From contig NC_047020.1 in NCBI RefSeq assembly GCF_902652985.1, positions 8,928,001-8,992,000 on the forward strand: 64,000 bases of DNA, given 5' to 3'. Under the pieces are notes generated by a model that saw only the letters and a list, made by a program, of their open reading frames with translations, was not told the origin of the DNA and ran no database searches. The stretch comes from Pecten maximus. Taxonomy: Eukaryota. Shown in pieces: positions 3,728-35,085 of the stretch (positions are counted from its first letter, which is position 1; each line of letters starts with the position of its first letter). Position numbers and translations under genes: made by a program.

Positions 3728-6700
3728 TCATCTGGTGGGAAGTTTGACACCAATGATTCCATCGTATCCATCCCTCATGTACACATACCAGCCCGGGAGA
3801 CCATACTCAGGGTTCTCTTTTTGTGTTTCTGTGTCGCCAGGCAGGTACAGGGGGCAGAATGACCGTGGTCCTGTACCAACACAGGGTAGAATCCCAAGGA
3901 GTTCCGAGTCCTTACTGAAGTAGGATACATGCTCCTTGTACTCCTTGGCCAGTTTATTCTGCTGTGTCCATGACAACAAGTATCCATCTATATTAAAAGT
4001 ACATAAAATGTGATAAATGAATGACTAATCTCCTTTGATAATACAAGTATCACTCATTGAATTCAGACAACTTCATCAGGAGCCCATTTATTCAGAGAAA
4101 AGGTAATCATTTCAGACAAGATTTGAATTTGAAAAGATCTCTCAGTTGTATTAAAGACAATATAAGGGAAGAAAAATGTTACACTGGACAAAAAAAAATT
4201 CACTTTACAACCCAGAAACGAATAAGTTTTGTTACAAAGGAAAAACTTTCAAGAAACTGATTTAAGAGTAAGGATGATTTGTGATCCCTGAGGCTCTCAT
4301 GTAATTAACACAACAAAGTTGTGTACAGTGACCAGCATTGATGAATACTTACTCTTCTCTCCTACAAAACAGTGTTCCACTGGAAAGCCTGAGATTGGCA
4401 GTACCTGTGTTACGACAACCTCTGGTGAGCTGGACAGAGGAAAGGTAAATTATATACAGGCCATCACATGACAAATATACAACTTTACACATATACGCAA
4501 AATGAATTGGAATATTTAAGTTAAAACAATACCAAAAACAATACAGGTTGTAGCAGATATAGTATTCCTATTTGTTTAGTTTTGCAAAAAGAAATATAAA
4601 CAATATGTAATTTTAATCATTTTTCTCTAAATAAAGTGTCTGTACTAACCTAGCTTCTTTTCAATTATTACTGGAAGTAAAATGACAAAGTTCAAAGTAA
4701 AACTGTCCGTAATCAATAACAAAACAACAGCACTGTGACTAATTCCTTCCTGACATTGATCAGAATTAGTGAAAAGAAAAATAAACAATGCAATCTGTCC
4801 ATTTTCTACCACCTCTGGTCAAACTACACAGGATGTCATAAACTGAACAAAGGGCCATTACTCTGTACGGAAAGGCCTGTCACCTGATTTCAGGTATGGC
4901 ACCTCTTGTGATACCAAATAAAATATTTGACAATTGTAGGTGACATAATACATTTGTATATAAGATATTCTCTGTACAATAATATGGAGAGAATCCAAAC
5001 CTATCACCCCTCTAGAAGGAACAGTTTACTTCAATATATAGTTTATATCCTACAGGTACCCAAATATTGAATAGGACATCCTAATTACCTAGAACCATCC
5101 TCTTGAATCTGTAAGGTCACTAGATTCATATCCATTCCAAGGATGGCCTCTCGGTAGCAGTGGTCAAGTCCTGTCCTGGAATGGTTAGAAAGAACCTTGA
5201 CCACTGTAAACTTTGCCTTGATTTCCAGGCCATTGTCAGTGATCTGTATTCCTTTCCTGTGATACACATAAGATATATATTATTAAATCAAATATGTTCA
5301 TTCATGATGTAATTGTTTTTGTATATGCATCTGTCAAAAATCCATGAAATGATCATTTAGGAACTTTCTGAGAAATAGCAACAGCCATCTCAAACTGTCA
5401 AAATTCAAAATGGCTGCCTGGCAACCCTCTTGTTTTCCAATCTTCTCAATATAAATCATGCACAACTTGGGACCAAGGGGAACATACATGTAAAATTTGA
5501 GAAATACCCATCAATAACACTGTGAAATAGCAATAACAAACTGCAAATGTCAAATTTTGAGTTCAAAATGGCCACTTGTTCGCTATCTTGTTTGCTGCTC
5601 AGTCTCAAAATAGAACATGTACAGCTAGGAACCTAGGATAGATATGAAATCTGAGATAGACCCATAGAGAACTTTCTGAGAAATAATGGTGGATTAGGAC
5701 AGATGCAAGAATGAGAACAATTCAATAGCCCACCATCTGAAGATGGTGCTACTTATAACAAAGTCAACTCACACATCACAGCCAGATGGTGTACCACTTA
5801 TAACAAAGTCAACTCACATATCACAGCCAGATGGTGTGTTACTTATAACAAAGTCAACTCACATATCACAGCCAGATCTGATGACCACAGTCTCCAGAGA
5901 TGGTACATTCACAAATCTGAAGTACCCTGTTTCTTTCAACATCACCATGACAACCGAGCAATCCAGAGGGGTAATCGTTTGGACATCGGGAAGTGTGTCA
6001 CCAGCCTCCTTGATGCTTCTATCATGCCAACACCACAACCTGGATTAGTAACAAAAATGGCTGGTGTGACCTTTAGCTTATCATCTTTGATTTTCTGCCT
6101 CAAAAATCAAATCTTCAATGCTCTATAATCAATGATCTAGAGTTTTAAATGGGTTTCCATGGAGAGCAGTGATAGGTTTTACTAAACTTGAGGCAGTTAT
6201 AGTGACACAAATATATATCACTCACATGTTATTTAATGGCACAGGAAAATATATATAGATCAGAAAAGGTTTTTTGGTTCACAGTTGAACCAATACCTCT
6301 ACTCCTACTGGGGTAAAAATCAACATTACCATTATAACTCTTGGTATTGTAGTTCTTTGAAGCTTTGAAATATATTTTTTTCTTTTATTTAATATGAACA
6401 TTGGACAAGGTCAGTTAAAAATCATTTAAGATTCCAACACACTAAATACCAATGTAATAGACCTGAACAAAACTTGTAACCCTTCATCCCTGTACACTGC
6501 CCGCCAAGACATAAGTGTTTAAATTTTGGTAATTTTGTTCACCTCGGAGTACAGAAACATGACTGATAATTTGTCTGATCCACTTAAAGGTTTACATGTG
6601 AGTGTATTAACATACCTCTTCTGGTTTGTTACCCTCAACAGACTAGAACCTATTATGTAAGGGAGGTTGTCCTCTTTATTACAGTTAATCTTCTGTATAA

Positions 6701-9700
6701 GCCTGCCTCTCTCTCCATATACCATCAGACAGGTCCTGTAACAGAAAACATCATTAATGTCAGTAGAAATCATTAAAATACCACTTAAAATATAGTAAAT
6801 CTTCAGCCATTAAATTCCTTGCAATCATAAAAGCATTTAAAAGTGTCTAATGTCCATTAATATGTTGATTATTTAAATGCACGTGGAATTACTCTTTCAC
6901 AAAACAACACTACAAACTTTGATCTACCAGACTTGTAAACCACCCTTGTTTTCGCTATGTTGTGGTATATGTGATAAGCTTGACAACTGATGGGGGCCAA
7001 GAATGTAGGTGTCGCTCAGAATCTTCTCCTCAGTCACCCAGAGGTGGTGACTATAACAAAGGTAGGTATTACTATTGTTGTCTTGGTAACTTTAAATATC
7101 TACTTGTTGTGGCGTACCTGGAAAATGAAACACTGTTAGTGGGTCCAACCCACACATCCTTGCAGATTAGGACACCCACACATCCTTGCAGATTATAACA
7201 CCCACACATCCTTGCAGATTAGGACACCCACACATCCTTGCAGATTAGGACACCCACACATCCTTGCAGATTATAACACCCACACATCCTTGCAGATTAG
7301 GACACCCACACATCCTTGCAGATTATAACACCCACACATCCTTGCAGATTAGGACACCCACACATCCTTGCAGATTAGGACACCCACACATCCTTGCAGA
7401 TTAGGACACCCACACATCCTTGCAGATTAGGACACCCACACATCCTTGCAGATTAGGACACCCACACATCCTTGCAGATTAGGACACCCACACATCCTTG
7501 CAGATTAGGACACCCACACATCCTTGCAGATTATAATGTCCACACATCCCTGCAGATTAGGACACCCACACATCCTTGCAGATTAGGACACCCACACATC
7601 CTTGCAGATTATAATGTCCACACATCCTTGCAGATTATAACACCCACACATCCTTGCAGATTAGGACACCCACACAATCCCTGCAGATTAGGACACCCAC
7701 ACATCCTTGCAGATTAGGACACCCACACATCCTTGCAGATTAGGACACCCACACATCCTTGCAGATTAAGACACCCACACAATCCCTGCAGATTAGGACA
7801 CCCACACATCCTTGCAGATTAGGACACCCACACATCCTTGCAGATTAGGACACCCACACATCCTTGCAGATTAGGACACCCACACATCCTTGCAGATTAG
7901 GACACCCACACATCCTTGCAGATTAGGACACCCACACATCCTTGCAGATTATAATGTCCACACAAACCTTGCAGATTAGGACAATTCTCAGGATTCTACC
8001 CTACCTGACAATCGATCTAGGTAACCTGGTATTTACCTTGTTTACAGTGGTAAGACATAGGTACTTACCTGTCAGACATTGGGTAGTAAAATATTCTGCC
8101 TCCCACCACCTTGTGGTCATGGTCTCTACAGTTTGGAATTTCTCCAAAATGTTTCAGTAAATGTGGCTCAAACTTGATAGTTGGGTGTAGGAAGCCCCGT
8201 CTGCTGCTACAGTCAACAAACTGGAATGTAGAAACAAGAACTGCACGTCACAGACATTAACAGAGATCTGTGAATTTTGAACTAATTTTATTAGAGGGAT
8301 AGAAATGACACCCCCGTATAATCTTGACTCGGTGAAGGTTGTAAAGGTAATAATGGTATGTTCAGGTTGGCATGTAGGTCCACACATATACTATAACCAA
8401 TTCTCAGGCCCCAATCACTAATACCACCACATAAAACTGTAAGCTGGATAACTACATAATGTTTTTGAAACATTTTTACTCCTGCCTCGATTGATTATCA
8501 AAATCTTCAGCTTCAGGAGTTTAAATTCCTCCCGTAAGTCATTGAAAAATGAAATTTATTAGCTAAAATTTGTTGAAATACTTTTCTATGTCTTTGATAT
8601 TCATTGGGTAATACAGATATCTGATATTCATTTGTTGGTTTTACTTACAACAGATATACACTCGTTGTTGAACTGAAAAGTGAATGCCAGTGTCTCCCCA
8701 TAGGAGACGTAGTCATTGTCCCACAACAAACTGGCACTCTTGTTAGTGTTCATGTCCAAAAGCTGCTTGCTATTCCATTGACTCTTAGGACACTTTTCTC
8801 TCTCAGTATTATAGGCAGACACAGCAGCTACTATGTCCTGTCAACAGATCAGGACTACAACTTACATCAAAAGTCAAGAGAAGACAACGGTGTCAAATAT
8901 CAACATCAAAACCAAGCGGAGACAACATAATCAATCAAATGTCTGCATATATGTCAAGGGGAGACAATAAAATAAATTATATGTCAAAGCAATAGTTGAA
9001 GGACAGGCAAAATCCTCAATCAAATATCAGTATATAAACCGAAGAGAGAAAATATGTCCTGAATAAAATATCAATATATAAACCAAGGGGAAACAACATC
9101 CTCAATCAAATATCAATATATAAACCAAGGGGAGACAACATCCTCAATCAAATATCAATATGTAAACCAAGGGGAGACAACATCCTCAATCAAATATCAA
9201 TATATAAACAAAGGGGAGACAACATCCTCAATCAAATATCAATATATAAACCAAGGGGAGACAACATCCTCAATCAAGTATCAATATATAAACCAAGGGG
9301 AGACAACATCCTCAATCAAGTATCAATATATAAACCAAGGGGAGACAACATCCTCAATCAAATATCAATATATAAACAAAGGGGAGACAACATCCTCAAT
9401 CAAATATCAATATATAAACCAAGGGGAGACAACATCCTCAATCAAGTATCAATATATAAACCAAGGGGAGACAACATCCTCAATCAAGTATCAATATATA
9501 AACCAAGGGGAGACAACATCCTCAATCAAATATCAATATATAAACCAAGGGGAGACAACATCCTTAATCAATATCAATATATAAACCAAGGGGAGACAAC
9601 ATCCTCAATCAAGTACCAATATATAAACCAAGGAGAGACAACATCCTCAATCAAGTATCAATATATAAACCAAGGGGAGACAACATCCTCAATCAAGTAT

Positions 9701-12700
9701 CAATATATAAACCAAGGGGAGACAACATCCTCAATCAAATATCAGTATATAAACCAAGGAGAAACAACATCCTCAATCAAATATCAATATATAAACCAAG
9801 GAGAGACAACATCCTCAATCAAATATCAATATATAAACCAAGGGGAGACAACATCCTCAATCAAGTATCAATATATAAACCAAGGAGAGACAACATCCTC
9901 AATCAAATATCAATATATAAACCAAGGGGAGACAACATCCTCAATCAAGTACCAATATATAAACCAAGGGGAGACAACATCCTCAATCAAATATCAATAT
10001 ATAAACCAAGGGGAGACAACATCCTCAATCAAATATCAATATGTAAACCAAGGGGAGACACCATCCTCAATCAAATATCAACACAAATGTAAAGAGAGAC
10101 AACATCCTCATTCAAATGTAAACATAAAAGTCAAGGAGAGAAACATGAGATTTCATTTCACATCAGTTAGTGAGCTTACAAAAATCAAAATATTGCCTTG
10201 ATATTAGGAGACTACATCTCAATAAGGCCAAGGGGAGGACTGAAGGTTAGTCAAAATGAAATAAACTAAAATTATCATATGTTCTCATTGCCAGTAGAAT
10301 TTTTCATCATTTAATTTTGGATGTAATGTTTCTGTACAGAAATTTCATTTGAATTTTTGATGTTGTTGTTATACTTACATCATAATTGATTAAAGATTTT
10401 GTGTCGTAATGGTGTTTCAACAGTCTAAAACAATCTTTCTGCCATTTCTCAGAGTTCTTCCTTAAAATAGGTTCATTCCGAATTCTCTTTTTCACTTTCT
10501 GTCAATAATACAATAAATCAATTCTTTAGTACAATAAAATTCATACACCACAAACCTGTAGTTTTTATTGGCATACAAAGCATATCCCATCCAGATAACA
10601 TAACAAATTTTCTATTTATAGTAAGTGACCTTGACCTTTGACCTTCAAACCTGAAAAGCAATCCCAAGCAAAAAGTTTTGATAAGGAAACACTATACAAA
10701 GTTTGAGTTTGATTGGCCTAAGGGAACTCAAGTTATTGCATGGAAACCAATTTTCCATTAATAGAAACAGTGACCTTGACCTTTGACCTTTGAACATGAA
10801 AGCAATCTCAAGCAAGCACTTTTGTAAGGAAGCACTGTATGAAGTTTGAGGTTGATTGGCCCAAGAGAACTCAAAGCTATCGCACAGAAACCACTGTGCG
10901 GACGACGCCGACGCTGCCACCGCTGCCAATGCCGACATAGTGATACCTATATGTCACCTTTTTCAGGCGACACAAAAAGGGAGAAAATTCAGTACAGTCA
11001 AGGGGAGGCAACACTGTTCACTGCTCATGGCCATCAAAAATATTGATAAAAAATAAAATGTCCGATTGATTCATGTACATGAAAGAGATACATTTATGTA
11101 TATGTACATAATTATTCAATTGTTATATTAGCCATAGGAAATCTAGTGCGAGATATCTAAAATTGATTTTAAAAAATGCTTAAAATACATTATTTTGAAT
11201 CCCACTGGCTACACCTTGTTGTGGCTAATATGCAGAAAATCATTGTATTATATTCCTTATTAATAATAATCTATACACATTCATCACAATATATTCTTTG
11301 AAAAGAAAACTAATAGATGACATTCCAAGCAATGACATTCACAAACGAACATCACCTGGTAAAATAAAGAATGATATAACAGTATCAACAATCGACTATA
11401 TATAACTGTTACCTCAAACAGTATCAGACGAAGGATATTCACAACATTTAGGGTAGCACTTTGACCTTTTCCGTCAGACCAGAAGAGGGTGATACAAGTT
11501 TCTCTTTGTATCTCTACATTTGATCGGAATTCACACTGCCGTTTTAAAGGAGAAGGAACCAACATAAGGACTGTGGTCCCGTCAGCATGATGGAACACCT
11601 TCAGAGGACATGGTATACAGCCATTATCTGGTAAACAGAAAATAAACATTCAGATCCCTGCAACCTTAAAAAGTGGCCAAGATCAAATTTACACACATAA
11701 CAGTCAGTCTTGATGCTGACTTACCACTGTGAGAGTAGAAATCCCCTTCATTGTCATAGAACTTGTCCAATGAAGTCCAAGTCTCGGTCCTACCTGGGGT
11801 CTGAGGGAAACACAGTCTTCTGTAAATAAATATACAGTTCTAAAGATTTTTCTTTACAAATGATTTGGAGTAAAAATAAAAAATATACCTTTCTGAGAAG
11901 ATGAACAATAAATTTGTCGAGGATTGTAAAAGTCCTGGTTAGCAAAGGACAGGAGAAATGAAACTTCTCACAACAGAGGCTAGTTTTTATAAACAAAAAC
12001 TGGTTCTACCTGGGAATAAAAGATCACAGCCTTTTTTTGTGTGTTTATTTAAGCATTTGTTGTTAGGACCTTACCCTGTATAGGGATCCAAGTTGATACT
12101 TCTCATTGGTGGCAGCATCATTTTTAGGTTTCCTGTTAAATAACCCTGGGAATTCAGTCGAAGGTCAAGATAATCACAGCACAAGTCAGCCTCCGCAAGA
12201 GAGAAGTAGAGGCTAAAAATTGAGAATGAAATACTGACTTACCTAAAATTCAAAAGTTTGCTTCTTGAATTGGGTGGCTTAACACTACATAGGTGAGAAC
12301 TACTAACAGTATACTGATCTCATTCCAAATAGAACAAGAGGCCCAGAGGGCCTGTATCGCTCACCTGGTTTCATGAGATATGAAACAAGAATGATGCTTA
12401 AGTATATTTGTCGCTGGTATTGCTATGTCAATATATATCAAAAGCATTTTATATGGGTACATGTACATTGGTTTTATTTTAATACTAAAAATGCCAAAAA
12501 GTGCATTAATCCATGAAATGAAATTGACTATTGGCGCGACCCCATAGGGATGCTACCACACAAATGTGAGTGATATCCATTGCTTAGTTTCAGAGAAGAT
12601 CTTGTTTAGACTAATTGACCCCTTTTGACCCTGCCCTCTGCCCCCTGGGGGGTCAGCTCCTTCCTTCATACAATTTTGAATCCCTACCCCAATAGGATGC

Positions 12701-15700
12701 TACCAGTCAAACCATTGCTTAGTTTCAGAGAATAAGTTGTTTAAATCAATTTAGCCAAATTGACCCCTTTTGGCCCCGCCCCTCAAGCCCCTGAGAGGTA
12801 AGCCCCATCATTTGTACAATTTTGAGTCCCCACCCCATAGTGATGCTACCAGGCAAATATGAGTGATAGCCATTGCTTGGTTTCAGAGAAGAAGTCGTTT
12901 ACATCAATAGCGCCAAAATGACCCCTTTTGGCCCCGCCCCAGAGGCCCCCAGGGGGTCAGCCCAATCATTTGTACAATTTTGAGTCCCCTTCTCATAGGG
13001 ATGCTTCTGACCAAATTTGTTCAAATTCCGATCAGCGGTTATGAAGAAGAAGTCAAATAAGTCAATTGTTGACGGACGGACGACGGACGCCACGGTATGG
13101 CATAAGCTCACCTTGGTCCTTCGGACCAGGTGAGCTAAAAATTACTTCTTTCAGGAACTTAGAGTGGATTTCAAATATGTCTTTAAAGAATCTAGACCTA
13201 TACATTACACAGTAAACTATATGTTTATATCATTTTTATCATGACGCCAGACTACAGCAATCTATCAAATATAACACTTTATCATATTTTAAGTTAAAAC
13301 ACACCTAAAATGTTGTGTGACACAAAACAACCAGATCTGGATTAAGTCCCCTGTTTTTATAAGGTGGGATCACAGACTCTGAGGGGCCTGTAGATGGGAC
13401 TATCATATGACATACAGAGATTTGAATAAATCCTCTATTATTACCTGGAAGGGTCACAGATTCTGAGGGGCTGTAGATGGGACCTCCACAGGACATATAG
13501 AGAATGGAGAAAGTCCCCTGTTATTACCTGGAGGGGTCACAGACTCTGAGGGGCTGTAGATGGGACCTCCACAGGACATTTATAGAATGGAGAAAGTCCC
13601 CTGTTATTACCTGGAGGGGTCACAGACTCTGAGGGGGTGTAGATGGGACCTCCACAGGATATATAGAGATTTGAGTAAATCCTCTATTATTACCTGGAGG
13701 GGTCACAGATTCTGAGGGGCGGTAGATGGGACCTCCACAGGATATATAGAGATTTGAGTAAATCCTCTATTATTACCTGGAGGGGTCACAGATTCTGAGG
13801 GGCGGTAGATGGGACCTCCACAGAACATGTAGTGGTTGGGGCAGTCCAGACTTGGTAACCATGTCTACGAGGGTATGCCAGATATTTCGTCTCTGTTGAC
13901 GTCTGCCTGAAGAACTATGTACATCAGAAATCATCCTCAGGCCTGGGGCATCTTCATCTCTAAATTTAACTCCCCTGTAACACATCATCCATTGCTTCAT
14001 TTAATATGAAAAGTATTAATTTGATTATCATAAAACATTATTATAAAATCAAAGATATATTCTAAAGCAGACTAACACCTTGTATTAGCTGGTGAATACC
14101 CCACCTAAAAGGATAAGGAAGGCCCTAACACATGCCATACAGACCAATACAGTTATCAAGTATAGCGATATAGTTATCAAGTATAGCGATATAGTTACCA
14201 AGTGTAGCGATATAGTTATCAAGTATAGCGATATAGTTATCAAGTATAGTGATATAGTTATCAAGTATAGCGATATAGTGATCAAGTATAGGGATATAAG
14301 TATAGCGATATAGTGATCAAGTATAGGGATATAAGTATAGCGATATAGTGATCAAGTATAGGGATATAGTTACCAAGTGTAGCGATATAGTTATCAAGTA
14401 TAGCGATATAGTTATCAAGTATAGTGATATAGTTATCAAGTATAGGGATATAGTTATCAAGTATAGCGATACAGTTATCAAGTATAGTGATATAGTTACC
14501 AAGTATAGCGATATAGTTATCAAGTACAGCGATATAGTTATCAAGTATAGGGATATGGTTATCAAGTATAGTGATATAGTTATCAAGTATAGCGATACAG
14601 TTACCAAGTACAGCGATATAGTTACCAAGTATAGCGAAATAGTTATCAAGTATAGCGATATAGTTACCAAGTATAGCGATACAGTTACCAAGTATAGCGA
14701 TATAGTTACCAAGTATAGCGAAATAGTTATCAAGTATAGCGATATAGTTATCAAGTATAGCGATACAGTTACCAAGTATAGCGATATAGTTACCAAGTAT
14801 AGCGATATAGTTATCAAGTATAGCGATATAGTTATCAAGTATAGTGATATAGTTATCAAGTACAGCGATATAGTTATCAAGTATAGCGATATAGTTATCA
14901 AGTATAGTGATATAGTTATCATGCATAGCGATATAGTTATCAAGTATAGCGATATAGTTATCAAGTATAGCGATATAGTTATCAAGTATAGTGATATAGT
15001 TATCATGCATAGTGATATAGTTATCAAGTACAGCGATAAAGTTATCATGCATAGCAATATAGTTATCAAGTATAGTGATATAGTTATCAAGTATAGCAAT
15101 ATAGTTATCAAGTATAGCGATAAAGTTATCAAGTATAGCGATATAGTTATCAAGTATAGCGATATAGTTATCAAGTATAGCGATATAGTTATCAAGTATC
15201 TGTTAATACAAACAAGCTGCTGTAGCTATATCAGAGGTCTGGTGTACCTTTGTAGGTACTCCCTGTAGGTGGCGTCGGCATCAGATCCCTGGCCAGACAA
15301 AGCATGCAGCATGCTGATATAGTACAAGTATTGTGGGCACACATCTAACATCTCCTGTAGTCGCCATTTTACCTCCTCAAAACTGGAAATTTCCTGTGTC
15401 TGAAAATGTAATGTAATGTGAAATCAGTTAAAAATACATTAATTTTACCTCTTTAAGACAATTTCTCCATATTGTAAGTATATACATATATATATGGTAT
15501 GTACCTGGTATATGATGTTATCATAAAGTCCTCCTTGCAATAAATTCATCCTTGTTTCCATGCAAGGCAAACACTGAACATTAAAATGATGTCAGCTGGT
15601 TCAAGGTGTAACCCTATCAATAGGTCTAACTGTAAGTTTAGATTTAGCAAAATCATCTGAATCAGTCAGTTTAGAAGACCATACATCATATAATGTATAG

Positions 15701-18700
15701 TACAAAACATTGAAAAGGGGACCTAAACAATCATTAATATACCCAGTCTGAAAAGTCAGTCTGGCTAAATTGTAGTGTAATGTACCTCCCAGTTCTGACT
15801 TAGAGAGTGATGAACCCTCATAACACATACACTATCATTAACGCTATGCTGTTTTACTTTGAAAGTGTTTAAATTACCATTTCCAGGTCTAGAGTGAAAG
15901 CACAACATAGAAACAGCTGCCATATTGGCTGCTCCATGGTTGAAATCTTGGGAAGTCACAACAAATTTCCAGTGGTCAGCAGCCTTCCTCTGATTGTCGG
16001 GGGTCATCATACTGTAATTTACAATATCCTCATCAGGTCAATCATAGGTGAAACAATATAGCTAGTCAGGCCGATCAATGGGTAAACAATACCCTGGTCA
16101 GCTGATCAGAGACAAAACAATATCCTGTCAGGCCGATCAATGGGAAACAATACCCTGGTCACATGATCAGAGACAAAACAATACCCTGGTCACATGATCA
16201 GAGACAAAATAATATCCTGTCAGACCAATCAATGGGAAACAATACCCTGGTCACATGATCAGAGACAAAATAATATCCTGTCAGACCGATCAATGGGAAA
16301 CAATACCCTGGTCAGCTGATCAGAGACAAAACAATATCCTGTCAGGCCGATCAATGGGAAACAATACCCTGGTCACATGATCAGAGACAAAACAATACCC
16401 TGGTCACATGATCAGAGACAAAACAATATCCTGGTCAGGCCGACCAATGGGAAACAATACCCTGGTCAGCTGATCAGAGACAAAACAATATCCTGTCAGG
16501 CCGATCAATGGGTAAACAATACCCTGGTCCGGCTGATCAGAGACAAAACAATATCCTGTCAGACCGTTCAGTGGAGAAACAATATCCTGGTCAGCTGATC
16601 AGAGGCTAACAATATCCAAGTCAGGCTGAATCCAATCTAGTTTATGTGTATTTTGTCTATTATATTTTATATACATTGGACATGCAAGTTTATTATATCA
16701 AGTCTTTTTGCTGCTGAATTACACAAGATTGTAAATGTAGTAGGAAAATAAGCTAATAAGTCTGTTGAGTTTATTGCCTGGTAAACGTACAGAGTCATTT
16801 TGAAGTGGGGTCTTTTTGTAGTAGCTAGTGGATACCTCACTGAACATCTTACATCAGGTATGTAACATGTTATCCAGAATAATTGGGGTTAAGTGTCTTG
16901 TCGAAAGAAACACAAATTGTGCAGGGTAGGGATACAACCTCACAACGCTGATCTTCATTGGAGGTTGTAATGAAGCTGTATATAATTAACCGAGTACTGT
17001 GTGGGAAGGTATGACCTGGCAGACATACAGACTGACAAAAGACAATAGGTAATCTTACCCCTGGTCATAAACACTCGCTAACAACATCATCATCTGTCCT
17101 GTTACTTCCTCCGAGTCTTTCATTGCCTTCCCTTTCTCAAGGGCAATGTCTGAGGCCATTCTGTAAAACTGACAGGCACTCTCTGGTTCCCCTAACTGGG
17201 CATGCATCCGTGCTATTTCCACCATACACATTGCACGATATCTGCCTGAAGAGGATGCACAATAAAACAGAGGAAATAAGGTGATACAATTTGTAGTAGA
17301 TGGTACCAAGAACAGGCTAATGAGAGTTCTGTAGAGAATGTGTATAGACATACAAAGTAAGGAACCATAATATGTTCAGGTCAGGACACGAACCAATCTA
17401 ATTGAAATTAGACTTGTTATTTCCATTCCTCTACGATACTCTACAATAGACTGTATCATAGAGGAGCGAAAATTACAAGTCTAATTTTAATTAGATTTGA
17501 CATGAACTTTCAAAATTCAAGAAAACAAACATCAACCAGCTGTCTTCAATGTAATATGATCAAATGTCTGGACCTTCAAAATTACAGGTGAAAGAAGGAT
17601 CACAAACTAAAACGCATCATTATAAAGGTATATAACAAGATCATGATGAATGAACATTTTGATCAATTTAACCTGCGTAACTTCAGTTTATTTATAATTC
17701 TGATAAAACAAATTGAAATATCAGTGATTCCAGTGTTTTTCATGTCTATTTGTGTAGTAATGATCATATCCAATATTAGAATGGCCAGATGAGGTCACTT
17801 TAGCAACACTGACAACCATTCTCTCCCAGTGTACTGGCCATCTGGTTACAGTTTATACTTACTGTGTGTCTCTCCCAGTGTACCGGCCATCTGGTTACAG
17901 TTTATACTTACTGTGTGTCTCTCTCTCAGTGTACCGGCCATCTGGTTACAGTTTATACTTACTGTGTGTATCTCCCAGTGTACCGGCCATCTGGTTACAG
18001 TTTATACTTACTGCGTGTCTCTCCCAGTGTACCGGCCATCTGGTTACAGTTTATACTTACTGTGTGTCTCTCCCAGTGTACCGGCCATCTGGTTACAGTT
18101 TATACTTACTGTGTGTCTCTCTCAGTGTACCGGCCATCTGGTTACAGTTAATACTTAATGCGTGTCTCTCCCAGTGTACCGGCCATCTGGTTACAGTTTA
18201 TACTTACTGCGTGTCTCTCCCAGTGTACCGGCCATCTGGTTACAGTTTATACTTACTGTGTGTCTCTCCCAGTGTACCGGCCATCTGGTTACAGTTTATA
18301 CTTACTGCGTGTCTCTCCCAGTGTACCGGCCATCTGGTTACAGTTTATACTTACTGCGTGTCTCTCCCAGTGTACCGGCCATCTGGTTACAGTTTATACT
18401 TACTGCGTGTCTCTCCCAGTGTACCGGCCATCTGGTTACAGTTTATACTTACTGCGTGTCTCTCCCAGTGTACCGGCCATCTGGTTACAGTTTATACTTA
18501 CTGTGTGTATCTCCCAGTGTACCGGCCATCTGGTTACAGTTTATACTTACTGCGTGTCTCTCCCAGTGTACAGGCCATCTGGTTACAGTTTATACTTACT
18601 GTGTGTATCTCCCAGTGTACCGGCCATCTGGTTACAGTTTATACTTACTGCGTGTCTCTCCCAGTGTACTGGCCATCTGGTTACAGTTTATACTTACTGC

Positions 18701-21148
18701 GTGTCTCTCCCAGTGTACCGGCCATCTGGTTACAGTTTATACTTACTGCGTGTCTCTCCCAGTGTACCGGCCATCTGGTTACAGTTTATACTTACTGCGT
18801 GTCTCTCCCAGTGTACCGGCCATCTGGTTACAGTTTATACTTACTGCGTGTCTCTCCCAGTGTACCGGCCATCTGGTTACAGTTTATACTTACTGTGTGT
18901 CTCTCCCAGTGTACCGGCCATCTGGTTACAGTTTATACTTACTGCGTGTCTCTCCCAGTGTACCGGCCATCTGGTTACAGTTTATACTTACTGTGTGTCT
19001 CTCCCAGTGTACCGGCCATCTGGTTACAGTTTATACTTACTGCGTGTCTCTCCCAGTGTACCGGCCATCACGTTACAGTTTATACTTACTGCGTGTCTCT
19101 CCATCTATCAGTTTCATGAAGAGTGTTGATGCAAGCTGGAGGTCTCCTCGAGCCCAGAATACATATGGCAAAACCTTGTCATAAAATAGGTCTACCACAT
19201 CAGCAAATCTGTTGAAACAGTAAGTAAGTTATCCTAATTACAATATGCTGAACAGCATTATTTTAACAAGAGATCCAGATCCTTTGGCCTGTATATTGTG
19301 TAAATAGTCCCAATAGCATAATTACTCCAGCCTTCCTTGTTCATGACATTACAATGTTTTAATGAAATGTAATTCAATTATTAACTTGCTTTTGGACCTA
19401 ACCTCATTTTAAGAGCCCTTTTTACTCTGATCATTGCCATTTCGATAGCAGACAGGATTTGTGTGGACTCCGATTCATACTGCTTCCTGATCATCACAGT
19501 CTCCGACAAGAATGCTGGCATCATTAGATCTACCAAAGTGGCAAGACCTGTGAAGACAAACAACATAAAAGGAGAAGAAATTATCAGTTGTTTAGCATAC
19601 GGTCTACTTTTCTTGGTTAAAACTCTCAAAATTTAAGATGATAGCCTTCTGGTCAGTCAATTTGTTTCTCGAATCGTGTAGTCATAAAAAAATTATTATG
19701 CACATCAAGGGACCAAGGGAACCCACATATGAAATTTGAGAGAGTTGATTAAGGAAGGACAGACAGCTGCCTACAGATAACGGGCAATTTGATAGCCCAG
19801 ATCTGATGGTCGAGGGCCAAAAGGGAGACAACTATTAACTCTAAAAATAAATATGTATTATTCCATTATGACATTCATAACACAAACAAATAATCAATAG
19901 AACTCTGACGTTTAAATCTGAATTCTTATATTGTGGTAATTAAAAGGGGGTAATAATTATTTACACTAAATCTTAATTATTGCACCATCTAAGGGGAGAT
20001 AATTAACTGTTATCTACAAACATGTACGCGGTAACATTGTAATAGGTTACATATATGGGTTATATATCCTTTTTTGCCATATATCTAAACCATGAGTCTG
20101 TCCAAACTTTAAAAGAATAATTATTTTAAGTTAATTCATACTTACATCCAAGGAATTTCTGGTGGAACATATATGAATCATTTGTGGGATTAAACCCTTT
20201 CGGAGTGACAAATATGGCTGGTAAGATAGATGATGTCTTACTGTAGTAATAATCAGAATGCACAAAGAAAAAGCCAAACTTTGGATAGGCCATGGAGTTC
20301 CATATATTCCTAGTAGGTAGGAGACATTTGTAAACAGGAGGATGTGACCGATGTTCTTTTGCAACAAAAAGTGATCCTTTCTTTTCTGCAAATGGCTGCC
20401 ATTGAGAAAACTGATTTTGTAACAAAGAGACCTGAAATTTTCTTAAACTCAGGTCATTGTTTGAATGCTTCACAATGTTTTTCAGGCCTTTAGGTAGCGG
20501 TGTTTGAACTTTCTTTTGGCGTATGGAATTCAAACACAGTTAAAACAGAGAAGGAATAGCCTTTTCTATAAAACTCCTGCTGTGTTCAACCAGTTTCTGT
20601 GTTTCCCCGAGATAGTCTGTCTCTACATATATATTACCCTCTAAAACTGATAAAACTTCATTTCCATCTAAAATATTATGTTTGTGTCTTTTACGTTTCT
20701 GCTTTTTACTAGGAGCACCTTTCTTTTCATGATGTTGGTGTGAAGTAACGACATTGTTTACCTTGCCACTAACACAAGATTTGTTAGATATATGGGCAAT
20801 ATCAAGGGGAGACAACTGTTGACTGGCCTCCCCATCACTACTGGACAAGGATGAAATCTCCTCTTCTGCTGAGAAATACAGATCATCATCTGAACTTAAT
20901 GTTAGCTTTAGTTCTGGTATATCTGGATAGCCTGATGACTGAGCACTCTGAACAGACACATCCTCATCAGAAGATGATGACAGAGCTGAGGCCTCATCAT
21001 CAACAGATTGTTTTTTTGATATTTTCGTCTTCCTTCTCCTAGGCTTTCTCTCTTGTGAATTTGAAAATTCCAGCGACACTGTTCTGGTATACGATGGTCG
21101 TGTTTGCCTTTGCTTGATGAGTGATGCAAGACAAGATTCTTCCTCCAT
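3728..21148 (-). CDS. Uncharacterised ~1263-codon protein, 19 coding exons: low-complexity N-terminus with NLS-like basic clusters, SOCS-box-like motif carrying an in-frame TAA at 20540-20542, TPR-like helical region, beta-rich C-terminal region
   Basis: Hand-spliced exons, all GT-AG with matching phases: 21148-20146, 19547-19403, 19208-19090, 17245-17059, 16011-15858, 15399-15248, 13974-13777, 12212-12075, 11819-11725, 11627-11413, 10498-10379, 8837-8649, 8220-8069, 7050-6928 (least certain), 6735-6616, 6039-5863, 5256-5089, 4429-4353, 3987-3728 (TGA). The sum is 3792 nt, divisible by 3. An acceptor TTTCCAG lies at about 21204, upstream of ATG 21148. Domain calls are by eye only. Confidence 0.85.
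5741..5877. repeat. 43-45-bp tandem repeat x3 containing the exon end plus GTGAGT donor (minus strand)
   Basis: agatggtg..acttataacaaagtcaactcacatatcacagcc repeated; the last copy overlaps exon 6039-5863. Confidence 0.9.
7148..7983. repeat. 26-bp intronic minisatellite
   Basis: Unit cccacacatccttgcagattaggaca, about 32 copies. Confidence 0.97.
8990..10135. repeat. 42-bp intronic minisatellite with degenerate edges
   Basis: Unit taaaccaaggggagacaacatcctcaatcaaatatcaatata. Confidence 0.96.
10575..10976 (-). mobile_element. Non-autonomous Helentron/HINE-like element fragment (TGACCTTGACC family)
   Basis: Two ~150-bp internal units with gtgaccttgacctttgacc, a GACG/GCC microsatellite-like tract and a terminal hairpin tgtcacc...ggcgaca followed by an A-run. 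Related decayed units lie at about 1140-1720. Confidence 0.55.
12334..13138 (-). mobile_element. Non-autonomous Helentron (HINE/DINE-1-like) element, short copy with about 3 internal ~158-bp repeats
   Basis: Reverse complement of 53124-55166: subterminal inverted repeats gctcacctgg/ccaggtgagc, GTCC microsatellite, 3' stem-loop aggccc-tct-gggcct, T-rich ends and no TSD. Confidence 0.88.
13330..13825. repeat. 83-bp tandem repeat (5 good copies plus 1 decayed) duplicating about 48 nt of exon end plus donor
   Basis: ttacctgg recurs at 13441, 13524, 13607, 13690 and 13773; the last is the real donor of exon 13974-13777. Confidence 0.93.
14149..15198. repeat. 21-bp intronic minisatellite (about 50 copies)
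   Basis: Unit atagttatcaagtatagcgat; it generates spurious heptad ORFs. Confidence 0.97.
16040..16630. repeat. Dimeric ~30+31-bp minisatellite
   Basis: Alternating acaataccctggtcagctgatcagagacaaa and acaatatcctgtcaggccgatcaatgggaa. Confidence 0.92.
16790..17000 (-). mobile_element. Decayed tRNA-derived SINE-like fragment
   Basis: ggggttaagtgtcttgtcgaaagaaacacaa resembles the reverse complement of the gtgtccttgggcaagacactt core common to V/Meta-type SINEs. A similar decayed copy lies at about 59430-59660. Confidence 0.35.
17394..17498. mobile_element. Palindromic MITE with 9-bp TSD (Mutator-like)
   Basis: Near-perfect 105-bp hairpin caatctaattgaaattagacttg...caagtctaattttaattagattt, flanked by gacacgaac and gacatgaac. 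Confidence 0.8.
17820..19101. repeat. 49-bp minisatellite (about 26 copies) containing the exon end plus GTAAGT donor (minus strand)
   Basis: Unit ctcccagtgtaccggccatctggttacagtttatacttactgcgtgtct; the terminal copy overlaps exon 19208-19090. Confidence 0.97.
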
Positions 21149-21674
21149 CTTGACTTTTGGTAAGTTACTACTTTATCACCGGTAGTATAATAGAGACACC
21201 ACCCTGGAAAATATAAACCATCAAAACTGAAAGAATGGACATTACCGAAACTACAGGTATGTAGCTGATTTCACAACCAATTATGGCAACACTATAGTTT
21301 TGAGAGAAGATGCCAATATCTGCAATGTATAGGTTATTTATCAATAATCATGTTCAGATTACATACTTTATAACCGGTCCCTATATAGGTCCCTAGTTAC
21401 TTTCCTGAAAACCAGAAGTTGAATGTTTCTGGTTACCCGACAACACAATGCCAATCTCAGATATCTAGCAATTTTTTGACCAAATAATTCAAGCAACAAC
21501 ACATAAGGCTAGTGACAGAAATATTCATTCAGCATTTGGTTGAAGTTGAAAATAAGAAAAACAATATTATAATTATGGGCCTTAACGGTCACCAGAGTTC
21601 TGAAGCATACAACAGATGATGTTTTGCTTCTAAACTAAGATTTAACATGTCAGCCTGATCCCTTGAATGTAGAT

Positions 21675-33639: not shown

Positions 33640-35085
33640 TCATATTGGTTTCCAACTGTATCCCAAGGCTTCGGACACTTTGTCCTGCATTTCTTGTTTC
33701 CGCTGCGAGTCGGGGTGTACTAGCTGATGAAACCTTGCAATACCCACAAGATAATACTGTCCATCTTCACCAGGGGCAATAACTCTGTCATCATCCTCAT
33801 CGTATGACAGTGCATCTTGGACTGTTATACAGCTATTGGGAATAACAAATTCATTCCAACAAGTACCACGGAGTTGAGCCAGTTTTTCAACTGATTCACA
33901 GCCAAGAGATCCATAGTATACAAAATGATTCAGATTTGGAGATCTCATAGCAAGGGAGACAAGTTCATTTTCTTTGCATGATGGATCACAGTAGCATGCA
34001 AACTTCTTCAAACTTCTGTAGTACATATCATTCAAGGAAGTTATAATTTGGGAATCACATTTTGAAAATTTCATGAATGTGATTGCAGTGAGTGGACAAT
34101 CTGTTTTCAACATGGATGCTAATTCTAGATGAGGAGTTCTGGCCAATAGTGTGCATTCCATCTCCACCTCTGGGTTAGCCAGCACAAACTGTTTCCAATG
34201 TGAGGAAGCAATTTCTGGTATTTTGAAGTTTTCATTTTGTGGACAGAAGTGCACAAAAACCTGTAGAAGTTTCAGCTTAGAGCGCCCTGGCTTAGACAGT
34301 TCTAGTATGATATCTTTATCCAGCATTGGTGATCGTAAGCTCAGCTGTTTCAGGTGCTGAAAATTGCATATAAGTGGTAGCATTGACTCAGGGGAGGGAA
34401 GGATCGGCATTCTCTCAGACCATTCTGTAGCCTTGCACCAGAAAAGACTGAGAGTTTTCAGGTCTTTCAATTTTGGGTTTTTGAGAATTACTTCAAAGAT
34501 GTTCAAATCTTGGTTTGATAGGCTGTGCGGATACATTGGCCATGATTTGATGTGGAAATGCTTTAATCGAACAGCATGTTGAATAAAGGACAACAATGCT
34601 GTGATATCTTTTACTAATGGCTGGTATCCGTCAATGTGGTAATAGGAGGTCAACCTTCCTATCTCCAAGGTCAAGCTCTCCAGACGACACTGCTTACTAA
34701 GCTCCTGCATGATACTGATCCACTCCTCTGGGAATTGGTTTAGATATTCAGTTACAGTTAGAGTAAGCTTTTTGAAAAATTTACCAAACCTGTTGATAAG
34801 TTTGATATATTTATGAGGAATAAAAATCCTAGATCTGATGGCATGGGAATAATTGTCAGTACATCCAAACAGGTGGATCTTCATAGTGTGCCACAAGCTT
34901 GGGTGATTGAAAATTTCGTACAAGGCTTGGCATGTTTGGGACACTACATATTGTTGGTGGAGGGGGAGATAACTCATTACTTCCACCCAAACAACCTCTG
35001 GAAGTTGACTGAAATCTGGACCCTGAGTCCTGGCATTCCTCATTGTCAGCAGTGGACTGGGTTCCTTCCCTTTCAACTGTATCAT
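33640..35085 (-). CDS. F-box / leucine-rich-repeat protein (FBXO39/FBXO33-like), single coding exon; the true start may be ATG 35182 via a 1-nt frame difference
   Basis: 481-aa ORF with F-box motif FSQLPEVVWVEVMSYLPLHQQYVVSQTCQALYEIFNHPSLW followed by degenerate LRR segments (FKKLTLTV, RLESLTLEI, RLKHFHIK, DLKTLSLF, HLKQLSLR, KLKLLQVF). Splice acceptor TTCCAG|G at 35210/35209. Confidence 0.9.
   Translation of the reverse strand: MIQLKGKEPSPLLTMRNARTQGPDFSQLPEVVWVEVMSYLPLHQQYVVSQTCQALYEIFNHPSLWHTMKIHLFGCTDNYSHAIRSRIFIPHKYIKLINRFGKFFKKLTLTVTEYLNQFPEEWISIMQELSKQCRLESLTLEIGRLTSYYHIDGYQPLVKDITALLSFIQHAVRLKHFHIKSWPMYPHSLSNQDLNIFEVILKNPKLKDLKTLSLFWCKATEWSERMPILPSPESMLPLICNFQHLKQLSLRSPMLDKDIILELSKPGRSKLKLLQVFVHFCPQNENFKIPEIASSHWKQFVLANPEVEMECTLLARTPHLELASMLKTDCPLTAITFMKFSKCDSQIITSLNDMYYRSLKKFACYCDPSCKENELVSLAMRSPNLNHFVYYGSLGCESVEKLAQLRGTCWNEFVIPNSCITVQDALSYDEDDDRVIAPGEDGQYYLVGIARFHQLVHPDSQRKQEMQDKVSEALGYSWKPI

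What the first reader, a model, noticed from the sequence alone, without database searches (positions are those of the whole stretch)
20146..21148. Single in-frame TAA inside a SOCS/BC-box motif of an otherwise intact 19-exon gene
Seen: ORFs 20540-21148 and 20126-20533 are in the same frame, separated only by TAA at 20542-20540 (context CTG TTT TAA CTG TGT). Reading through gives IPSLF*LCLNSIRQKKVQTPLPKGLKNIV. Known: this fits the SOCS-box pattern (BC box PSLxxLCxxxI followed by an LPxP-like/LK cullin box) that recruits Elongin BC and Cullin-5. Seen: the other 18 exons (about 930 codons) splice in phase with no stop or frameshift, so this is not a decayed pseudogene. Inference: it is a very recent nonsense allele (one change from CAA, AAA or GAA), a consensus error, or programmed UAA-C readthrough. 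Readthrough would switch between a 202-aa acidic/NLS peptide and a ~1263-aa E3 substrate receptor.
Basis: partly seen in the sequence, partly recalled or inferred. Interest (0 to 1): 0.8.

Follow-up and report, generated by a model that had tools for sequence, protein, structure and literature searches.

The report
Reference-only stop codon in scallop gene
The stop codon that splits this king-scallop gene is found only in the reference assembly, because four other public datasets and the sister genes all read a normal glutamate codon there, so it is an ordinary rare null allele or a leftover assembly error and not a regulated read-through switch.

Summary
The TAA at window 20542-20540 (minus strand) is really there and splits a 334-codon first coding exon.

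It is private to the reference. In 4 of 4 public runs laid on the site (three DNA runs from three samples, one spliced RNA run), the only contig across it reads GAA, Glu. All 3 paralogues in the same genome read GAA too.

The genome is Pecten maximus xPecMax1.1. Its polishing removed homozygous non-reference bases, so a real heterozygous nonsense allele is more likely than a consensus error. That step is inference.

The rest of the gene is intact: 18 blocks cover paralogue residues 1-1216.

It belongs to an uncharacterised mollusc and annelid family of about 1,200 aa. The box is conserved but matches the BC box plus Cul2 box (VHL-box) pattern, not the Cul5 LPxP SOCS box:
- Cul2 box in 34 of 43 members, LPΦP in 1 of 43.
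- No Pfam SOCS_box hit.
- Moderate profile-profile match to scallop SOCS boxes.
- Weak structural match to VHL.

Overall: ordinary lesion, mildly interesting family.

The parts
20540..20542 (-). Codon 203, TAA in the reference assembly. It reads GAA (Glu) in all four other datasets and in the paralogues.
   Evidence: In one search, plus-strand 20542 is A in the window and C in X1, X3, X4 and X6, each at full contig depth. Searches give the paralogue codons.
20146..21148 (-). First coding exon (334 codons plus 1 base): ATG at 21148, acidic Ser/Asp/Glu-rich leader, basic KKQKRKR stretch, adaptor-box-like motif, conserved tail.
   Evidence: The spliced RNA contig X6 record 25 covers 20144-21158. 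53% identical to paralogue P0055 residues 1-343.
20522..20551 (-). BC-box-like motif, codons 200-209 (S-L-F-stop-L-C-L-N-S-I). It fits (S,T,P)LXXX(C,S,A)XXXΦ, with the stop at a variable X position.
   Evidence: Consensus taken from passages of PMC4878042.
20471..20497 (-). Cul2-box-like motif, codons 218-226 (LPKGLKNIV). It fits ΦPXXΦXXXΦ and lies 8 residues after the BC box.
   Evidence: Consensus and spacing taken from passages of PMC3355856.
20291..20293 (-). First in-frame ATG after the stop. It is the start of the 104-aa NCBI model XP_033742372.1 for this locus.
19403..19547 (-). Exon 2.
   Evidence: RNA contig junction and extent (tables 5 and 8). tblastn block 19545-19399.
17058..17282 (-). 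Exon block with weak TPR similarity, part of the helical repeat region.
   Evidence: TPR_7 E 0.012, below cut-off. (71-73% identity to P0055 and P0002).
3734..19210 (-). The other downstream coding blocks, approximate limits from tblastn: 19210-19079, 16025-15879, 15423-15247, 13958-13779, 12196-12074, 11818-11744, 11628-11401, 10501-10379, 8837-8649, 8220-8083, 6755-6615, 6044-5865, 5258-5088, 4428-4351, 3988-3734 (the block 17282-17058 is listed separately).
   Evidence: None of these blocks has an internal stop.

Best explanation
The window holds an expressed, otherwise intact multi-exon gene of the king scallop Pecten maximus. I found 18 coding blocks.

The reference haplotype carries a single G-to-T change (GAA to TAA) that no other sampled dataset shows. 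Most likely this is a real, rare, probably heterozygous loss-of-function allele of the sequenced animal. The premature stop lies in the first of many exons, so the transcript would be expected to be degraded by nonsense-mediated decay or to yield a 202-aa fragment that ends inside the adaptor box.

No read-through mechanism is needed or indicated.

The protein belongs to an uncharacterised mollusc and annelid family. Its layout is a disordered acidic/basic leader, a conserved BC-box plus Cul2-box-like motif, a TPR-like helical solenoid and a beta-propeller-like C-terminus. A plausible but untested function is a substrate receptor of an Elongin BC-Cullin-2 ubiquitin ligase.
For: Shown:
- at plus-strand 20542 all four runs read C where the window has A, one contig each, at depths 11.6/11.6, 28.5/28.5, 36.3/36.3 and 22.3/22.3, and at least 246 letters from a contig end. 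They are three DNA runs from three samples and three studies, plus one run whose contig is spliced.
- X3 agrees with the window at four nearby sites (20207, 20259, 20437, 20498) where X1, X4 and X6 differ, yet it still has C at 20542. The A is therefore missing from both local haplotype backgrounds.
- paralogues L002, L003 and L004 read GAA there.
- the equivalent residue is E in 26 of 43 family members. The others are Q 6, D 5, and one each of H, M, G, A, S, F.
-, table 5: the RNA contig joins exon 1 to exon 2 with GT..AG ends and has zero depth in the intron bins 19966-20113, so the GAA allele is transcribed and spliced.
- the rest of the gene is intact.
- the assembly size (918,306,378 bp) and scaffold count (3,983) match the P. 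maximus paper exactly. L002's ORF equals a P. maximus RefSeq protein.

Inference for allele over error: passages of PMC7191990 say the assembly had three rounds of freebayes polishing with 113.7x reads of the same animal, applying homozygous non-reference edits. A plain consensus error should have been corrected.

Family and box.
Against: - All four runs were available only as Logan contigs. These drop minority variants, so they show that GAA is present, not that TAA is absent. I could not see raw reads of the reference animal.
- Run identities are coded. That X1, X2 and X5 are the reference animal's 10X data is a guess from year, sample grouping and size.
- A consensus error that escaped polishing is therefore not excluded.
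- Exon 1 shows 9 nonsynonymous against 5 synonymous differences among the runs. Constraint on this exon is weak, and the gene has at least three paralogues, so loss may cost little.
- For the function: no Pfam domain passes its cut-off. No solved structure is a sequence relative. The Atlas look-up gave only noise. Structural matches to VHL and SOCS boxes are below significance.
Confidence: 0.7

Rival explanations
1. Residual consensus error. The true sequence of the reference animal is GAA on both haplotypes, and the T is an artefact of the PacBio/wtdbg2 consensus that polishing failed to fix.
For: The A at plus-strand 20542 is seen in none of the 4 runs laid. The best DNA holder X1 may be the reference animal itself (notes) and shows GAA. 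A paralogue (L004) has a one-base frame change in the same assembly, which could be another error.
Against: The published pipeline applied homozygous non-reference edits from 113.7x Illumina data in three rounds (passages). Long-read consensus errors are mostly insertions and deletions, not substitutions (general knowledge, not tested here). The X1 contig differs from the window at 14 sites in 1,815 bases, as expected for the other haplotype of a 1.71% heterozygous animal. Its GAA therefore says nothing about the assembled haplotype.
Confidence: 0.2
2. Programmed UAA read-through that switches between a 202-aa peptide and the full-length protein.
For: Only the intactness of the downstream exons and the fact that the stop falls on a variable position of the motif.
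Against: The stop is not conserved: 4 of 4 other datasets and 3 of 3 paralogues have GAA, and none of 43 family members lacks a residue there. The expressed RNA contig carries GAA. UAA is generally the least leaky stop codon (general knowledge).
Confidence: 0.02
3. A young pseudogene: this paralogue is being lost in the species and the stop is the first disabling hit.
For: The family is multi-copy in this genome. Exon 1 polymorphism is rich in amino-acid changes, 9 of 14. Paralogue L004 also carries a frame change.
Against: Other individuals carry an open frame. One expresses and splices it. No second lesion was found in 18 blocks.
Confidence: 0.06

Closest known systems
VHL-box substrate receptors of Cullin-2 ligases (VHL, LRR-1, FEM1, ZYG11/ZER1, PRAME)
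   Same: A BC box (S,T,P)LXXX(C,S,A)XXXΦ is followed after 8-23 residues by ΦPXXΦXXXΦ (definitions from passages of PMC4878042 and PMC3355856). This is met in the window gene and in 34 of 43 relatives. The box sits N-terminal to repeat domains, as PRAME's N-terminal VHL box does. The best VIA match of the box model is the VHL box itself, residues 153-211.
   Different: No sequence homology to any of these proteins was detected. The hydrophobic residue at BC position 10 is kept in only 19 of 43. Structural scores are weak: Z 3.9, Foldseek E 7-10. Binding is untested.
SOCS-box proteins (Pfam PF07525), e.g. WSB1, ASB9, SOCS2
   Same: The profile-profile alignment of the family motif with 29 scallop SOCS boxes covers the whole box: hhalign probability 62%, P 7.4e-5, 36 columns, and 0 of 200 column shuffles reach the score. 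The general layout is a beta-propeller-like domain plus an adaptor box.
   Different: No PF07525 hit. LPΦP is present in 1 of 43. The box is N-terminal rather than C-terminal.
Segregating loss-of-function alleles in highly heterozygous bivalves
   Same: A single private nonsense change in one haplotype of a wild animal with 1.71% heterozygosity, in a gene with paralogues.
   Different: Allele frequency is unknown. It is not yet separated from an assembly error.

Membership tests
Programmed stop-codon read-through gene | The stop codon is conserved at the site in other individuals, paralogues or orthologues | tested here: not met
   GAA in 4 of 4 runs and in 3 of 3 paralogues. A sense residue in 43 of 43 relatives that carry the motif.
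Programmed stop-codon read-through gene | Translation demonstrably continues past the stop | not testable with these tools
   This needs ribosome profiling, peptides or a reporter assay.
SOCS box (Pfam PF07525) | Match to the Pfam SOCS_box profile at or above its cut-off | tested here: not met
   No hit at E up to 10 on the window pieces, intact paralogue exon 1 or L004, and none at E up to 1 on four full-length relatives. The whole-genome PF07525 search lists 74 places, none at this locus or at L002, L003 or L004.
SOCS box (Pfam PF07525) | Cul5 box with LPΦP | tested here: not met
   1 of 43 relatives. The window gene has LPKG.
SOCS box (Pfam PF07525) | Profile-profile similarity to bona fide SOCS boxes | tested here: inconclusive
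   hhalign probability 62.4%, P 7.4e-5, score 22.1. Column shuffles give mean 8.0 and maximum 20.5 (0 of 200 reach 22.1). The reversed alignment scores 7.7 and the F-box control 9.2.
VHL box (BC box + Cul2 box) | BC box (S,T,P)LXXX(C,S,A)XXXΦ | tested here: met
   Window: S-L-F-(stop/E)-L-C-L-N-S-I. The core P-S/T-L-x-x-L-C/A/S is found in 43 of the 54 family proteins examined. The full pattern including Φ at position 10 is found in 19 of 43.
VHL box (BC box + Cul2 box) | Cul2 box ΦPXXΦXXXΦ, 8-23 residues after the BC box | tested here: met
   Window: LPKGLKNIV, 8 residues after the BC box. Relatives: 34 of 43, and 38 of 43 within 60 residues. Shuffled tails give a mean of 1.5 of 43 and a maximum of 7 in 1,000 shuffles.
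VHL box (BC box + Cul2 box) | Helix-loop-helix fold that can be superposed on solved VHL or SOCS boxes | tested here: inconclusive
   The model of L002 residues 185-342 has helices at 18-28 and 37-66 with pLDDT 82-89 over the box. Foldseek gave nothing at E up to 0.001; 5 of its 26 weak rows are FEM1B (twice), ASB9, VHL and SOCS2 at E 6.9-9.7. VIA best of 26: VHL residues 153-211, Z 3.9, rmsd 6.9 over 54 residues.
VHL box (BC box + Cul2 box) | Binding of Elongin B/C and Cullin-2 | not testable with these tools
   No complex prediction or experiment was available.

The most novel reading that the evidence does not exclude
An uncharacterised protein family of about 1,200 aa, seen here only in molluscs and one annelid, may be a new class of Elongin BC-Cullin-2 substrate receptors. 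Its layout is an acidic/basic leader, a conserved BC-box plus Cul2-box motif, a TPR-like solenoid and a beta-propeller-like end. The family has expanded in scallops, and the reference king scallop would then carry a heterozygous natural knockout of one paralogue.
Probability: 0.3. Interest if true: 0.5.

Novelty: new member of a known kind. Interest (0 to 1): 0.2.

Why it matters
The proposed read-through switch does not exist, so nothing new about translation follows from this site.

Two practical points remain:
- The private stop has broken the public annotation of this locus. RefSeq holds only a 104-aa fragment that starts at the next ATG. A gene comparable in length to its 1,217-aa paralogue is therefore missing from the P. 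maximus proteome used for comparative work.
- The gene belongs to a conserved family that carries no name or Pfam domain. Its one invariant N-terminal motif fits the published pattern of a Cullin-2 adaptor box, which gives a cheap, direct hypothesis to test for about 50 orphan mollusc and annelid proteins.

Tried and rejected
- Pfam on the two pieces, on intact paralogue exons and on four full-length relatives gave only sub-threshold TPR hits and no SOCS_box.
- The ESM Atlas look-up of P0055 gave scores of 0.75-0.77, in the noise range.
- A PDB sequence search with the family profile gave only E about 0.3 hits of the basic stretch to histone H2B tails.
- The search for homologous proteins with the 202-aa piece scored nothing at E up to 1e-10 among 172 candidates. 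Its length window excludes full-length relatives.
- The F-box was tested as an alternative adaptor motif and rejected: hhalign score 9.2, P 0.14.
- RNA editing as the source of the Glu codon is rejected because the three DNA runs also read GAA.
- An intron that removes the stop is rejected because the RNA contig is collinear with 20144-21158 (table 8).
- The full-length AlphaFold model from 11 sequences was poor: mean pLDDT 58, with the box region below 50. It served only to show a helical repeat at 284-574, a beta-rich C-terminus, and Foldseek matches to WD40-type propellers at E 1e-6 to 1e-4 with low TM-scores.
- Two look-ups of earlier findings by words gave nothing that bears on this site.
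- I did not verify splice phases or the count of 19 exons, and I did not compute dN/dS.
- Supplementary files of the papers were not opened. Those of PMC7191990 could hold read-quality details relevant to the choice between error and allele.
- Papers seen: PMC7191990, PMC3355856 and PMC4878042 as passages only. PMC8437780 and PMC7653742 as search listings only.
Full report
**Observation.** On the minus strand the window reads CCT TCT CTG TTT TAA CTG TGT, with TAA at 20542-20540. The 202-codon ORF from ATG 21148 and the following 137-codon open stretch are in the same frame. The exon ends at 20146 before GTAAGT.

**Origin.** The window is G000:C6:8928001-8992000 of an assembly of 918,306,378 bases in 3,983 contigs. 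Passages of PMC7191990 give exactly these figures for the Pecten maximus assembly. The ORF of paralogue locus L002 equals the start of a P. maximus RefSeq protein.

**Is the stop real outside the reference?**
- I laid three DNA runs (three samples, three studies) and one run guessed to be RNA on window 19300-21500. All were available only as Logan contigs.
- At plus-strand 20542 the window has A. All four runs have C in the single contig that covers the site, at full contig depth and at least 246 letters from a contig end. On the coding strand this is GAA, Glu.
- The X6 contig (3,617 letters) is collinear with 20144-21158 and jumps to 19403-19545. The skipped stretch has GT..AG ends on the minus strand, and depth is zero in the intron bins 19966-20113. 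It is therefore spliced RNA, and the transcribed allele is GAA.
- X3 shares the window's letters at 20207, 20259, 20437 and 20498, where X1, X4 and X6 differ, yet X3 still has C at 20542. The A is missing from both local haplotype backgrounds.

**Paralogues.**
- A six-frame search of the same genome with the 131-aa second piece found two intact copies on the same contig (L002, L003; 56-57% identity; open frames of 371 and 354 aa) and a third copy on contig C5 (L004).
- All three read ...VPSLVELC..., with GAA at the site.
- Among the 54 family proteins examined, 43 carry the motif. The residue at the stop-equivalent position is E in 26, Q in 6, D in 5, and H, M, G, A, S or F in one each.
That condition is met.

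**Allele or error?**
- This could not be settled, because contigs show presence and not absence, and I could not see the reference animal's raw reads.
- The paper's passages describe wtdbg2 assembly of PacBio reads, Arrow polishing, and three rounds of freebayes polishing with 113.7x linked reads of the same animal that applied homozygous non-reference edits. Heterozygosity was 1.71%.
- If both haplotypes of that animal were GAA, the site should have been edited. A letter that survived polishing argues that a share of the animal's reads carry it. This is inference.
- X1, X2 and X5 share one sample and one study of 2019, and may be that animal's 10X runs. That is a guess, because ids are coded.
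- The X1 contig differs from the window at 14 sites in 1,815 bases. This is what the second haplotype would look like.
- I put a real, probably heterozygous nonsense allele at about 0.7 and a residual error at about 0.2.
- A stop in the first of many exons is expected to trigger nonsense-mediated decay (established knowledge), so the TAA allele is probably null.

**The rest of the gene.**
- tblastn of P0055 (P. maximus, 1,217 aa) and P0002 (Mizuhopecten, 1,218 aa) against the window gives 18 collinear blocks from 21148 to 3734, covering P0055 residues 1-1216 at 38-88% identity. There is no other internal stop.
- Two stops flagged at 6050-5862 and 4464-4345 lie one codon outside the stop-free exon stretches listed. 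They are at the edges of the alignment blocks.
Splice phases and the count of 19 exons are therefore unverified.
- Differences among the four runs in exon 1, other than the stop, are 5 synonymous and 9 nonsynonymous, plus an in-frame 3-base insertion. Constraint on this exon is weak.

**Annotation consequence.** P0015 is XP_033742372.1, a 104-aa 'uncharacterized protein LOC117328886' of P. maximus. It is 100% identical to the window from the first ATG after the stop (20293-20291). It reads through exon 2 into the intron. The stop has broken the public gene model.

**The family.**
- A profile of exon 1 (alignment A2) searched against 1.84 billion representatives gave 54 proteins at E up to 0.001, 34 at 1e-10 and 5 at 1e-30.
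- Of the 21 representatives I looked up, 16 carry a source name and all 16 are 'uncharacterized', 'hypothetical' or 'unnamed'.
- The named ones come from scallops, Saccostrea, Mytilus, Mya, Mactra, Potamilus, Solemya, the gastropods Babylonia and Littorina, and the annelid Owenia. The other 33 representatives were not looked up.
- Full-length members are 1,125-1,333 aa.
- No Pfam family passes its cut-off, only weak TPR hits. No PDB sequence relative was found. The Atlas gave nothing.
- A full-length model of P0043 from 11 sequences is of low quality (mean pLDDT 58). It shows a disordered first 186 residues, a helical repeat at 284-574 at pLDDT 70-89, and a beta-rich C-terminus. Foldseek matches the latter to WD40-type propellers and to helical-plus-propeller proteins at E 1e-6 to 1e-4 with low TM-scores.

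**The adaptor box.**
- In the 11 full-length members the P, both L and the downstream P are invariant, and the C is 90% conserved.
- The published definitions were read as passages. The BC box is (S,T,P)LXXX(C,S,A)XXXΦ and the Cul2 box is ΦPXXΦXXXΦ (PMC4878042). The Cul2 box lies 8-23 residues after the BC box, and LPΦP specifies Cul5 (PMC3355856).
- The window gene has S-L-F-(stop)-L-C-L-N-S-I, then 8 residues, then LPKGLKNIV. Both patterns are met.
- Among the 43 relatives:
  - the full BC pattern holds in 19;
  - a Cul2 box at 8-23 residues holds in 34 (38 within 60 residues), against a mean of 1.5 and a maximum of 7 in 1,000 shuffles of the tails;
  - LPΦP occurs in 1.
- A whole-genome search with Pfam SOCS_box listed 74 places, none at this locus or its paralogues.
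- Using 29 of the 30 best scallop SOCS boxes as a reference alignment, hhalign aligns the family motif over 36 columns, BC box on BC box and LPxP on the LPxxLK-type second motif. Probability is 62.4%, P 7.4e-5 and score 22.1.
- None of 200 column shuffles reaches that score (mean 8.0, maximum 20.5), and the reversed alignment scores 7.7. Against 26 scallop F-boxes the score is 9.2, P 0.14.
- A model of L002 residues 185-342 from 45 sequences gives helices at 18-28 (BC box) and 37-66 (starting at the Cul2-box proline) with pLDDT 82-89.
- Foldseek finds nothing at E up to 0.001. Five of its 26 weak rows are Elongin BC-binding receptors: FEM1B twice, ASB9, VHL and SOCS2, at E 6.9-9.7 and 16-28% identity. 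The FEM1B and SOCS2 rows have rmsd 1.5-2.4 over 32-35 columns.
- VIA-align ranks VHL residues 153-211 first of the 26, but at only Z 3.9 and rmsd 6.9 over 54 residues.
- Taken together, the motif and its conservation are solid. Similarity to Elongin BC boxes is moderate at profile level and inconclusive at fold level. The cullin box is of the Cul2 kind, not the Cul5 kind. Binding is untested.

**Verdict.** The finding is an ordinary single-base lesion private to the reference assembly, so the read-through switch is refuted. The by-product is a modestly interesting orphan family with a VHL-box-like motif.

Noticed in passing
L004:1799-1880 (G000:C5, about 7.42 Mb), minus strand: The C5 paralogue changes reading frame by one base between its BC box (EVPSLVELCIFASRKLPQ) and its Cul2-box-like part (TQTLIPGGIKSIL), judged against the Argopecten relative P0032. 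It is either a real frameshift or an assembly indel. This is a second lesion next to the same box in this family.
   Followed up: partly
window 13447-13832, minus strand: The last 18 codons of the exon block 13958-13779 match P0055 residues 637-654 four more times downstream, at 13749, 13666, 13583 and 13500, with a period of 83 bases. This is a tandem array seeded on the exon end and its donor, like the minisatellite noted by others at 17820-19101.
   Followed up: no
window 20291-20293 and 19384-19632, minus strand: RefSeq XP_033742372.1 (104 aa) starts at the first ATG after the stop and reads through the exon 2 donor into the intron. The public model of this locus is a fragment.
   Followed up: yes
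window 19670-19743: A short element at about 19706-19741 in intron 1 has summed contig depth above 1,000 in all four runs, with many contigs ending on it (tables 2, 7, 8). It is a high-copy dispersed repeat.
   Followed up: no
window 34879-35013, minus strand: Pfam F-box-like (PF12937) match, 38.9 bits, E 7.9e-7, in an open frame of 483 aa. This is the neighbouring F-box gene that other first-reader notes describe.
   Followed up: no
G000:C6:32622510-32622701 and C6:32549703-32549894: The TPR-exon matches in the two intact paralogue loci are each flagged with one TAA inside the match. I did not check whether it lies at the exon edge.
   Followed up: no
window 20146-21148: Among the four runs, exon 1 carries 9 nonsynonymous and 5 synonymous differences from the reference, besides the stop. 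The RNA run also has an in-frame GCA insertion after 20824.
   Followed up: partly
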